A stretch of DNA of 64,000 nucleotides, taken from positions 62,001 through 126,000 of the IMG/VR virus record IMGVR_UViG_3300009158_000031; one strand, 5' to 3'. How positions within the stretch are numbered: position 1 is the stretch's first letter; each line of letters begins with the position of its first letter. Shown piece by piece: positions 52,142-52,544 of the stretch. A program made the translations under genes and the position numbers. A model generated the notes under the pieces. It was given only the letters and a program-made list of their open reading frames with translations, had not been told where the DNA came from and ran no database searches.

Positions 52142-52260
52142 AAATCAAAGTACCGAGATATATAATTAACAAACTTTTAAAATGTTTGTATTCTGTGAAA
52201 CTGGATAACTTTCCATCATATAATATAAACAAACGTTCTTTAAATTAACACAAACTTTAA

Positions 52261-52320
52261 CAAGTGGTAAGCGGTCGAGTTACTTCGTTATCAGAAAAAC
52301 ACTCACCCATCATTCCCTTG
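52261..52320 (+). ncRNA. candidate Y-like RNA 1 (bulged-C helix)
   Basis: GGT[C]GAGT (52273-80) pairs with ACTCACC (52301-07); outer CAAG/CTTG; lies upstream of Ro60. Confidence 0.5.
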
Positions 52321-52330
52321 ATAAGATATT

Positions 52331-52502
52331 TTGATAGTAGTTATGCGTAGAGTTACATCGTAATCCAACTTCGCAAGAAGTTATTATACAATTAATTCTA
52401 TAAATGAAAACCAAAGATTGCGGTTCTTAATTGATCCACTATCACACGAATTTAAGCTTAGGCTTTTATTCAAAACCATCTCTACCCGGGATTCTCTATC
52501 AA
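52331..52502 (+). ncRNA. candidate Y-like RNA 2 (paired ends, internal multi-hairpin domain)
   Basis: TTGATAG/CTATCAA; G[C]GTAGAG/CTCTACC; AACTTC-GCAA-GAAGTT; CAATTAA/TTAATTG; shares GAGTTACWTCGTWATC with unit 1. Confidence 0.55.
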
Positions 52503-52512
52503 ACATTTTTAC

Positions 52513-52544
52513 AAGGGATTTGCTTTCGAGCGAATCCCTTTTTT
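52513..52544 (+). terminator. intrinsic terminator between candidate RNAs and Ro60
   Basis: AAGGGATTTGCT-TTCG-AGCGAATCCCTT-TTTT. Confidence 0.9.

What the first reader, a model, noticed from the sequence alone, without database searches (positions are those of the whole stretch)
52217..52544. Two tandem candidate Y-like RNAs with bulged-C helices and a shared 16-nt motif, closed by a terminator just before Ro60
Seen: unit 1 (52261-52320) forms GGU[C]GAGU/ACUCACC. Unit 2 (52331-52502) pairs its ends (UUGAUAG/CUAUCAA), has G[C]GUAGAG/CUCUACC and contains internal hairpins including a GCAA tetraloop. Both carry GAGTTAC(T/A)TCGT(T/A)ATC just 3' of the helix. A CATATAA motif lies at 52217 and a UUCG terminator at 52513-52544. 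Known: Ro60 binds a 5'/3' helix with a bulged C (GGUC[C]GAG in vertebrate Y RNAs). Inference: this is either a new Y RNA class or a Ro60-sensing attenuator that autoregulates rsr. I saw no convincing tRNA-like (YrlA-type) module.
Basis: partly seen in the sequence, partly recalled or inferred. Interest (0 to 1): 0.8.

Follow-up and report, generated by a model that had tools for sequence, protein, structure and literature searches.

The report
Tandem Y-like RNAs beside phage Ro60
Two small structured RNAs just upstream of a jumbo phage's Ro60 gene belong to a large, uncatalogued family of phage RNAs that share one conserved stem "handle" and carry interchangeable inserts (often tRNA look-alikes); they are most likely the RNA partners of the phage Ro60 protein.

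Summary
A covariance model built only from units in other phage contigs finds exactly two significant matches in the 64-kb window. Both carry a family scaffold. It has a terminal helix P1 with a near-invariant bulged U, a conserved internal loop, and a variable, covarying helix P2. P2 is followed by the motif UACUUCG, then an insert of 11-141 nt.

In 96 independent units, all 17 modelled pairs show compensatory changes. In 72 Ro60 loci, all 150 matches lie on the Ro60 strand. In relatives the insert is often a tRNA-like module that gives sub-threshold Rfam YrlA matches. The window's unit 1 has only a minihelix, and unit 2 has a 118-nt insert that is not tRNA-like.

In lake metatranscriptomes the region assembles as separate contigs, one spanning 52252-52544. 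Their depth is 3-16 times that of the flanks and ends in the terminator's U-tract.

The units are therefore Y-RNA-like RNAs of a new phage lineage. The bulged C is not the conserved element, and nothing supports an attenuator. Ro60 binding is inferred, not shown.

The parts
52195..52224 (+). Promoter-like site (GTGAAA, 18 nt, TATAAT).
   Evidence: Consensus scan. The stretch is identical in the relative whose Ro60 is 91% identical. Metatranscriptome contigs of the upstream gene stop at 52191 and the RNA contigs start at 52245-52252, leaving this stretch uncovered. The transcription start is inferred, not mapped.
52256..52325 (+). Unit 1, a minimal scaffold-only RNA. P1 is 52261-52267 with 52315-52320 (U52265 bulged). 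P2 is 52273-52280 with 52301-52307 (C52276 bulged). The core motif GAGUUACUUCG is at 52277-52287. A 3-bp stub with a 7-nt loop lies at 52284-52296.
   Evidence: R1 match at 52259-52322: 44.5 bits, E 2.3e-7, full model. The MFE fold equals the family structure.
52330..52503 (+). Unit 2, the same scaffold with a 118-nt insert. P1 is 52330-52340 with 52494-52503 (U52338 bulged). P2 is 52345-52352 with 52480-52486 (C52346 bulged). The core motif GAGUUACAUCG is at 52350-52360. The insert at 52361-52478 holds hairpins at 52367-52382 (GCAA loop), 52420-52439 and 52448-52471.
   Evidence: R1 match at 52332-52501: 33.8 bits, E 5.5e-5. The variant C52421U, seen in RNA runs and in L139, repairs a C.A mismatch in the 52420-52439 hairpin. 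There is no T-loop or D-arm.
52513..52546 (+). Intrinsic terminator: 12-bp stem, UUCG loop, U-tract.
   Evidence: -16.9 kcal/mol, z -5.0. L141 carries a compensatory U-A to C-G change in the stem. The RNA contig of run X9 ends at 52544, and depth falls from 15.8 to 1.0.
52575..54164 (+). Ro60 (TROVE) gene, 529 aa, the presumed protein partner.
   Evidence: Pfam TROVE E 2.4e-13. The best solved relative is Thermus phage phiLo Ro60 (9KOP/9L5Y), E 1.3e-20 over residues 13-515.

Best explanation
The stretch from about 52230 to 52546 is a small-RNA gene. It is transcribed from its own promoter and ends at an intrinsic terminator 30 nt before the Ro60 start codon. It encodes two tandem Y-RNA-like RNAs, probably made as one precursor.

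Each RNA is built on the same handle, in this order:
1. A helix P1 formed by the unit's 5' and 3' ends. It has a bulged U flanked by conserved G-C and R-Y pairs.
2. A conserved asymmetric internal loop, 5' UAA and 3' ..UU.
3. A second helix P2 of free sequence.
4. The invariant motif UACUUCG, which faces an A-rich 3' strand.

In relatives that carry a tRNA cloverleaf, UACUUCG occupies the 5' strand of the acceptor stem.

I infer that the handle, most likely P1 plus the internal loop, is the docking site for the phage Ro60 ring, as the terminal bulged helix is in animal Y RNAs. I also infer that the insert beyond UACUUCG is a cargo that recruits or mimics something else. Unit 1 carries no cargo, only a minihelix; it resembles the 'long hairpin' second Y RNAs YrlB and Yrn2. 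Unit 2 carries a lineage-specific 118-nt domain where relatives carry tRNA mimics.

Shown: the family, the structure, the linkage to Ro60, and presence in RNA libraries. Inferred: Ro60 binding, which part is bound, processing into two RNAs, and the role of the inserts.
For: 1. A model built without the window finds both units and nothing else in 64 kb.

2. Structure. On 96 distinct units from loci fetched through the Ro60 protein (none used in the model), 89% of cells are paired against 62% in shuffles. All 17 pairs have compensatory changes. The covariation score is 0.705, against 0.20 for shuffles and at most 0.16 when the partners are slid. The 63-unit set gives the same picture.

3. Linkage to Ro60.
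- All 150 matches in 72 Ro60 loci are on the Ro60 strand. 66 of the 72 loci have at least one match, and 5 of the 6 without have under 1.2 kb of upstream sequence.
- The 11-mer core occurs 107 times on the Ro60 strand and 7 times on the other in 592 kb. 63 copies lie within 2 kb upstream and 23 within 1 kb downstream.
- Contigs that at first seemed to lack Ro60 do carry it elsewhere.

4. Kinship with Y RNAs. In relatives the insert is a tRNA-like module (27 of 63 units have a T-loop). These modules match Rfam YrlA at 21-39 bits, E down to 5e-7.

5. Expression. Four lake metatranscriptomes give separate contigs at 52252-52544 (depth 18.1), 52252-52487 (12.2), 52245-52517 and 52338-52488. Flanking depth is 1-5. 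24 RNA runs hold part of the 301 nt.

6. Precedent. Thermus phage phiLo Ro60 binds two Y-like RNAs encoded upstream of its gene (PMC12135203). M. smegmatis YrlA and YrlB lie upstream of rsr and come from one precursor, and every species studied has a second, long-hairpin Y RNA (PMC4201824).
Against: - No binding data exist for any member of this family.
- The motifs held to mark Ro60 sites are not family features. Animals have GGUCCGA and YrlA has GNCGAAN0-1G. Unit 1's GGUCGAG sits in the variable helix.
- Rfam Y_RNA and YrlA give no match in the window even at E of 10 or less.
- The run contigs have no strand and could in principle include DNA.
- Some units enclose sequences that pass the Rfam tRNA threshold. 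The scaffold could therefore serve tRNA-like RNA biogenesis rather than Ro60 docking.
- For unit 2, free-energy folding prefers a local helix that competes with P2.
Confidence: 0.7

Rival explanations
1. Cis-acting leader or attenuator. The two units and the terminator form a 5' leader of the Ro60 mRNA. Ro60 binding to the units would set read-through, giving autoregulation.
For: - The terminator ends only 30 nt before the ATG, with no convincing promoter in between.
- Ro60 is covered at about a quarter or less of the RNA's depth, which fits partial read-through.
- A terminator stands between the last unit and Ro60 in several distant relatives.
- The terminator's 5' arm (CAAGGGAUU) could pair with unit 1's P1 3' strand (AUUCCCUUG).
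Against: - Homologous units lie up to 4-5 kb from Ro60, are interleaved with tRNA genes, and also lie downstream of Ro60. A leader element would not.
- The RNA accumulates as a separate contig that ends in the U-tract, at much higher depth than the gene.
- No conserved antiterminator pairing was found.
- This reading could coexist with the main explanation.
Confidence: 0.1
2. tRNA-array processing cassette. The scaffold is a leader-trailer stem that directs maturation or stabilises phage tRNA-like RNAs. Its proximity to Ro60 only reflects that both sit in the phage's tRNA/RNA-repair island. The window's units would then be decayed remnants.
For: - Units are embedded in tRNA arrays (L204, L087, L184).
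- Some inserts score as tRNA: 43-53 bits in the crAss-like phages, where GenBank annotates them as tRNA-Tyr, tRNA-Lys and tRNA-Gln.
- UACUUCG occupies the acceptor 5' strand in an ARAGORN call.
Against: - 28 of 63 units, including unit 1, have no tRNA-like insert yet keep every conserved scaffold position.
- The window's units are among the best-covered features in the RNA runs.
- The shared 'acceptor' has conserved mismatches. In the csAssE-Sib 'tRNA-Lys' only 4 of 7 acceptor pairs form. These look like mimics, not decoders.
- Same-strand linkage to Ro60 is nearly universal.
Confidence: 0.12
3. Partner RNA of the adjacent phage SmpB: a divergent tmRNA-like RNA.
For: An SmpB homolog (E 3e-47) starts 52 nt after Ro60. 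No tmRNA is found in the window.
Against: - Neither unit has a tRNA-like acceptor/T-arm domain or a tag reading frame.
- SmpB accompanies the units only in this phage and its 91% relatives. The RNA family follows Ro60 everywhere.
Confidence: 0.03

Closest known systems
Bacterial and phage YrlA (Rfam RF02553; Chen et al. 2014, PMC4201824)
   Same: - Encoded next to Ro60 on the same strand.
- The 5' and 3' ends pair into a long interrupted stem that carries a module.
- In related phages the module of this family is a permuted T-arm / closed acceptor / D-arm element that matches RF02553 positions 23-87.
   Different: - The window's units have no tRNA-like module.
- The stem is a different, longer two-helix handle with its own invariant bases (bulged U, UAA/UU, UACUUCG). 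The GNCGAAN0-1G motif is not a family feature.
- No match reaches the Rfam threshold: 0 in the window, at most 39 bits in relatives, against a threshold of 69.
- Phages of Alphaproteobacteria and Actinobacteria carry YrlA-like RNAs but not this handle.
Second Y RNAs: YrlB (S. Typhimurium, M. smegmatis) and Yrn2 (D. radiodurans)
   Same: [quoted passage not shown] It is encoded in tandem with a larger Y-like RNA upstream of Ro60. In M. smegmatis the two come from one precursor (PMC4201824).
   Different: No sequence family is defined for YrlB or Yrn2, so only the architecture can be compared. Binding is shown for those RNAs, not here.
Yrl1 and Yrl2 of Thermus phage phiLo (PMC12135203; PDB 9KOP, 9L5Y)
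   Same: Two Y-like RNAs lie upstream of a phage Ro60 gene. That Ro60 is the closest solved relative of the window's protein.
   Different: - The phiLo RNAs were picked by their CGAA motifs.
- The scaffold model finds nothing upstream of phiLo Ro60. It gives only weak matches (20-24 bits) downstream.
- The two proteins are 24.5% identical.
Animal Y RNAs (Rfam RF00019)
   Same: A terminal helix made by the RNA's two ends, with a conserved single-base bulge and conserved neighbouring pairs, followed by an internal loop and a second stem. The gene product is a partner of Ro60.
   Different: - The bulge is U, not C.
- No GGUCCGA motif in the terminal helix.
- No RF00019 match at E of 10 or less.
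- Inserts replace the pyrimidine-rich loop.
D. radiodurans Yrn1
   Same: Some units of this family carry the tRNA-like part in normal tRNA order, with the acceptor-like stem leading into the handle. Chen et al. contrast Yrn1's arrangement of the T and D arms with YrlA's (PMC4201824).
   Different: Here both arm orders, tRNA order and the permuted YrlA order, occur side by side in one array on an identical handle. Yrn1 and YrlA were thought to have evolved independently.

Membership tests
Animal Y RNA (RF00019) | A terminal 5'/3' helix containing GGUCCGA with a bulged C. | tested here: not met
   Unit 1 has GGU[C]GAG, but in the inner helix P2, whose sequence is free in the family. The terminal helix bulges a U. 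Unit 2's bulged C is U in L141.
Animal Y RNA (RF00019) | A match to the Rfam covariance model. | tested here: not met
   No RF00019 match in 52100-52620 at E of 10 or less, and none in the window at the gathering score.
YrlA (RF02553) | Encoded within a few kb of Ro60 on the same strand. | tested here: met
   The units end 250 and 72 nt before the Ro60 ATG, on the same strand. Family-wide, 150 of 150 matches are on the Ro60 strand.
YrlA (RF02553) | A tRNA-like module with T-arm and D-arm. | tested here: not met
   ARAGORN finds none and Rfam gives no match in the window. The inserts have no T-loop. The feature is met in homologous units of L006, L007 and L008.
YrlA (RF02553) | The GNCGAAN0-1G motif near the 5' end. 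| tested here: not met
   Absent from both units. In the family, UACUUCG is followed by A in only 14 of 61 units, so CGAA is not conserved.
YrlA (RF02553) | A score at or above the Rfam gathering score (69 bits). | tested here: not met
   No match in the window. Relatives score 20.9-39 bits.
Any Y RNA | Bound and stabilised by Ro60. | not testable with these tools
   Only genomic linkage and precedent are available (PMC12135203).
UACUUCG-handle family (defined here) | P1 with a bulged U, the UAA/UU loop, a covarying P2, and the core GAGUUACUUCG. The test is a significant match to model R1, which was built without the window. | tested here: met
   Unit 1: 44.5 bits, E 2.3e-7. Unit 2: 33.8 bits, E 5.5e-5. 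Both match the full model length.
Intrinsic terminator | A GC-containing hairpin followed by a U-tract, with transcripts ending there. | tested here: met
   There is a compensatory change in L141. The RNA contig ends at 52544 and depth drops 16-fold. The contigs carry no strand information.
Transcription attenuator or riboswitch-like leader | A conserved alternative (antiterminator) pairing that competes with the terminator. | tested here: inconclusive
   An 8-of-9 complementarity exists between unit 1's P1 3' strand and the terminator's 5' arm, seen by eye. No covariation or conservation test was possible.
tmRNA | A tRNA-like domain plus a tag reading frame. | tested here: not met
   ARAGORN and the Rfam tmRNA models find nothing in the window.

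The most novel reading that the evidence does not exclude
Phage Ro60 particles may use one constant RNA handle (P1, P2, UACUUCG) to display interchangeable cargo domains. The cargoes seen are tRNA mimics in both normal and permuted topology, bare acceptor minihelices, and bespoke domains such as unit 2's insert. They are encoded as tandem arrays of up to about seven units.

On this reading Ro60 is a general adaptor. The phage would use it to recruit, decoy or titrate host tRNA-binding enzymes or tRNA-targeting defences. This would operate in phages that appear to infect Bacteroidota, including crAss-like gut phages.
Probability: 0.3. Interest if true: 0.85.

Novelty: new variant of a known kind. 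Interest (0 to 1): 0.7.

Why it matters
Y RNAs are hard to find by sequence. Bacterial ones are known mostly through the YrlA tRNA-like module, and what Ro60 actually recognises in them is unsettled.

This family offers hundreds of natural variants. I counted 63, 96 and 150 matches in three searches, and 518 Ro60 relatives in IMG/VR alone. All share a sharply conserved handle while the rest of the RNA is free to vary. That is a ready-made mutational map of a probable Ro60 docking site.

The family also shows minimal, permuted and unpermuted tRNA-mimic versions side by side on the same handle. This bears on whether YrlA-type and Yrn1-type RNAs arose independently.

In practical terms, it suggests that some "tRNA" genes annotated next to Ro60 in crAss-like phages are Y-like tRNA mimics. 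It also provides a covariance model that could seed a new Rfam family.

Tried and rejected
- **Rfam and ARAGORN.** Rfam at gathering score over the whole window, Rfam at E of 10 or less over 52100-52620, and ARAGORN gave nothing relevant.
- **Near-identical DNA.** A megablast search of GenBank phages found no match.
- **Hand-written stem parsers.** Two versions mis-assigned 3' arms in AT-rich sequence. I replaced them with a covariance model.
- **First MAFFT alignment.** The alignment of 24 units was shifted by one column at the 3' end. It was redone with 15 units, which also kept the window out of the model.
- **Third helix.** Pairing of UUC in the motif with GAA in the A-rich strand is possible in most short units. 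Both sides are invariant, so covariation cannot test it. In units with a U-run acceptor it does not form. I left it out of the model.
- **Free-energy folding of unit 2.** It prefers a competing local helix. I did not adopt it, because family covariation supports P2. The conflict is recorded as unexplained.
- **Bacterial genomes.** Only two MAG contigs carry this Ro60 clade, probably phage DNA, so no host could be named.
- **Resemblance to vertebrate Y RNAs.** The handle looks a little like the GUAGUGAGUUAUC stretch of the vertebrate upper stem. This is recalled from memory and unsupported by RF00019, so I make no claim.
- **Thermus phage phiLo.** The region upstream of its Ro60 shows no similarity to the handle.

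Full report
**Setting.** The window comes from a freshwater jumbo phage. It is identical to IMG/VR contigs of 134-254 kb. The finding lies in a 433-nt gap between genes. Upstream is a 170-aa ORF with an ATP-dependent ligase adenylation domain (51629-52141). Downstream is a 529-aa TROVE/Ro60 gene (52575-54164). After Ro60 come an SmpB homolog and a protein with a poly(A) polymerase / CCA-adding head domain. The closest solved relative of the Ro60 is that of Thermus phage phiLo (E 1.3e-20). That protein binds two Y-like RNAs encoded upstream of its gene (PMC12135203).

**The observation.**
- The whole stretch folds much better than shuffled versions (z -4.9).
- The terminator does too (z -5.0).
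- Unit 1 alone does not (z -1.7), so thermodynamics does not settle the matter.
- Rfam finds nothing in the window at the gathering score, and no Y_RNA or YrlA match in 52100-52620 at E of 10 or less. ARAGORN finds no tRNA or tmRNA.

**Relatives.** I fetched loci that encode relatives of the Ro60 protein and read their upstream regions. The same short strings recur there many times in tandem: AAGUGGUAAG or AGUAGUAA, then GAGUUACUUCG, and further on ACACUC ... CAUUCCCUU.
- With at most one mismatch, the 11-mer core occurs 75 times on the Ro60 strand and 6 times on the other in 274 kb. About 2 per strand are expected.
- In a second, non-redundant set of 59 loci (592 kb) the counts are 107 and 7. 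There, 63 copies lie within 2 kb upstream of Ro60, 23 within 1 kb downstream, and 1 inside the gene.

**Structure.** Fifteen short units from contigs other than the window and its close relatives aligned cleanly. They suggested two helices.
- P1 is formed by the ends of the unit: 8 bp interrupted by a bulged U.
- P2 is 7-9 bp and ends in GAGU/ACUC.
- Between them is an internal loop.
- On the seed alignment, 90% of cells pair and 14 of 17 pairs show compensatory changes.

Model R1, built from this seed, was then run on the window as an independent test. It reports 52259-52322 (44.5 bits, E 2.3e-7) and 52332-52501 (33.8 bits, E 5.5e-5), and nothing else below E = 1.
- On 37 Ro60 loci it finds 63 units, all on the Ro60 strand.
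- On 72 further loci it finds 150 units, again all on the Ro60 strand. 66 of the 72 loci have at least one, and 5 of the 6 without have under 1.2 kb of upstream sequence.
- The 96 distinct units of the alignment made from that second set were not used in the model. In them 89.1% of cells pair, against 61.8% in shuffles. All 17 pairs have compensatory changes. The covariation score is 0.705, against 0.204 for shuffles and at most 0.16 with slid partners.

One caveat: these alignments are fitted to the model. However, the slid and shuffled controls fall far short of the observed values, and several pairs show all four Watson-Crick types.

**Consensus.** Reading 5' to 3':
- five free bases;
- G (55 of 63 units);
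- a bulged U (62 of 63);
- R, paired with Y (A-U in 41 units, G-C in 21, never mispaired);
- G (63 of 63);
- U-A-A;
- P2;
- U(63) A(57) C(63) U(54) U(61) C(63) G(57);
- the insert;
- an A-rich run;
- ACUC and the rest of P2;
- A-R-Y..W..U(60) U(63) C(63) Y C;
- five free bases.

The invariant positions therefore lie in P1, in the loop next to it, and in UACUUCG. P2 varies freely. A single-base bulge 4-5 nt before the end of P2's 5' strand occurs in about 16 of 63 units: 10 U, 4 C and 2 A. The window's C52276 is one of these. Unit 2's C52346 is a U in the relative whose Ro60 is 91% identical.

**Inserts.**
- 28 of 63 units carry 11-36 nt, a small hairpin. Unit 1 has 13 nt.
- 27 carry a T-loop. 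Among these are cloverleaves in normal tRNA order and permuted T-arm / closed acceptor / D-arm modules. The permuted ones match Rfam YrlA positions 23-87 at 21-39 bits, E down to 5e-7. Some permuted modules have an added anticodon arm.
- The rest carry other domains. Unit 2's 118 nt belong here, with three hairpins and no T-loop or D-arm.

In one unit with normal tRNA order, ARAGORN's tRNA call begins exactly at the U of UACUUCG. The motif therefore sits where the 5' acceptor strand would be. On that reading, unit 1 keeps only a 3-bp stub of this stem, closed by a 7-nt loop.

**Range of the family.** The handle accompanies Ro60 proteins down to 27-37% identity.
- A 634-kb uncultured megaphage (LR745206).
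- The crAss-like phages csAssE-Sib and cr111_1. There, GenBank's tRNA-Tyr, tRNA-Lys and tRNA-Gln just upstream of Ro60 lie inside scaffold units.
- By contrast, phages of Caulobacter, Brevundimonas and Streptomyces have YrlA-like sub-threshold matches upstream of Ro60 and no handle.
- Vibrio phage pv27, the halovirus and phiLo give no match or only weak ones.

Only two MAG contigs in the genome collection carry this Ro60 clade. The handle thus marks a separate, AT-rich phage lineage of Y-like RNAs. A Bacteroidota host range is an inference. It rests on the crAss-like members and on a T9SS sorting domain in one contig.

**Expression.** Contigs from four lake metatranscriptomes cover the locus unevenly.
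- In run X9 one 304-nt contig lies on 52252-52544 at depth 18.1. Neighbouring genes are at 1-5, and the first 200 nt of Ro60 are at 1.0.
- X15 has a contig at 52252-52487 (depth 12.2).
- X11 has one at 52245-52517.
- X14 has one at 52338-52488.
- Contigs of the upstream gene stop at 52191, so the promoter-like stretch is uncovered.
- The 3' end of the X9 contig falls in the terminator's U-tract.
- 24 metatranscriptome runs hold part of the 301-nt stretch.

These are assembler contigs without strand information, and RNA libraries can contain DNA. The evidence is good for presence and enrichment, but not for exact ends. Two strain differences seen in the RNA runs are an extra A in unit 1's loop and C52421U. 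The second repairs a mismatch in a hairpin of unit 2's insert.

**How it most likely works.** The shown facts are:
- a conserved, covarying two-helix handle;
- near-obligate same-strand linkage to Ro60;
- tRNA-mimic inserts of the YrlA kind in homologues;
- accumulation in RNA libraries.

These fit the known behaviour of Y RNAs. Ro60 binds a conserved bulged helix made by the RNA's ends, and the rest of the RNA tethers other factors or gates the ring (PMC4201824, PMC12135203). I therefore read units 1 and 2 as the Y RNAs of this phage's Ro60.
- P1 and its loop are the probable docking site.
- Unit 1 is a cargo-free form comparable to the long-hairpin YrlB and Yrn2.
- Unit 2 is the cargo-bearing form.
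- Co-transcription and later processing are inferred. The grounds are the 7-9 nt spacing, the single promoter-like site and terminator, and the contig that spans both units. The M. smegmatis YrlA/YrlB precursor is a precedent.

Ro60 itself is probably expressed by read-through of the terminator. I saw no promoter in the 30 nt between them, and this remains untested.

**Rivals.**
- *Attenuator.* This is not excluded for this one locus. It is hard to square with units lying kilobases from Ro60, downstream of it, or interleaved with tRNA genes.
- *Pure tRNA-processing cassette.* This is contradicted by the many cargo-free units that keep every conserved handle position, and by the defective shared acceptor.
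- *Partnership with the neighbouring SmpB.* This is unlikely. SmpB accompanies the RNAs only in this phage and its closest relatives.

**Novelty.** Y-like RNAs next to phage Ro60 genes are known: 22 phages in Chen et al. 2014, and phiLo in 2025. What appears new is this particular handle. It is not captured by any Rfam model, and I did not find it in the searched literature. Also apparently new are its modular use with both tRNA topologies and with no cargo at all, its tandem arrays of up to about seven units, and its presence in crAss-like phages. I file it as a new variant of a known kind.

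Noticed in passing
window 54216-54656: A phage-encoded SmpB homolog (Pfam SmpB E 3e-47) starts 52 nt after Ro60. No tmRNA is detectable in the 64-kb window. SmpB accompanies Ro60 only in this phage and its 91% relatives.
   Followed up: partly
window 51629-52141, 55079-55813, 47121-48626: RNA-metabolism neighbours: a 170-aa ATP-dependent ligase adenylation domain alone, a 244-aa poly(A) polymerase / CCA-adding head-domain protein, and a RimK-type ATP-grasp fused to a Zn-protease-like domain. 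Together with Ro60 and SmpB this looks like an RNA repair and quality-control island.
   Followed up: no
window 52513-52546; L135, L143, L144, L146: The terminator stem sequence AAGGGAUU/AAUCCCUU is kept almost letter for letter in loci whose Ro60 is only 59-70% identical, while its loop varies. L141 has a compensatory change in it. Its 5' arm resembles a P1 5' strand without the bulge and is 8-of-9 complementary to unit 1's P1 3' strand.
   Followed up: partly
window 52347-52355 with 52393-52401: In unit 2, free-energy folding pairs GUAGAGUUA with UAAUUCUAU inside the insert. This excludes the family helix P2. The 20-nt partner stretch is identical in the 91% relative although its flanks differ. 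It may be a structural switch, and it is unexplained.
   Followed up: partly
L006 2756-2964 (= L134 about 4756-4964): A 209-nt tRNA-like RNA (acceptor, D-arm, anticodon arm, T-arm) with an insert of about 125 nt in the variable region ends about 40 nt before Ro60. It sits where other phages have their last scaffold unit. Neither ARAGORN nor Rfam calls it.
   Followed up: no
L221 3497-3914 (OR575929, phage csAssE-Sib); L297 2890-3326 (MT774387, cr111_1): GenBank-annotated tRNA-Tyr, tRNA-Lys and tRNA-Gln immediately upstream of Ro60 in crAss-like phages lie inside scaffold units. The 'tRNA-Lys' acceptor stem has only 4 of 7 pairs. These are probably Y-like tRNA mimics rather than decoding tRNAs.
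   Followed up: partly
L135 6641-6833, L138 1483-1670, and 23 core motifs within 1 kb downstream of Ro60 in other loci: Many relatives have a further unit directly downstream of the Ro60 stop codon, with a conserved insert of about 140 nt of its own. The window has none there, because SmpB follows at once.
   Followed up: no
L143 680-900: In a relative whose Ro60 is 70% identical, the two units upstream of Ro60 have decayed. The P1-like ends are kept and the UACUUCG core is lost, so the model scores them at 14 bits or less. A GIY-YIG/NUMOD-like homing endonuclease ORF sits just upstream.
   Followed up: no
L296 7791-8048 (Brevundimonas phage Marchewka): A permuted tmRNA (Rfam RF04321, 57 bits, above threshold) lies about 2.4 kb downstream of that phage's Ro60, among tRNA genes.
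   Followed up: no
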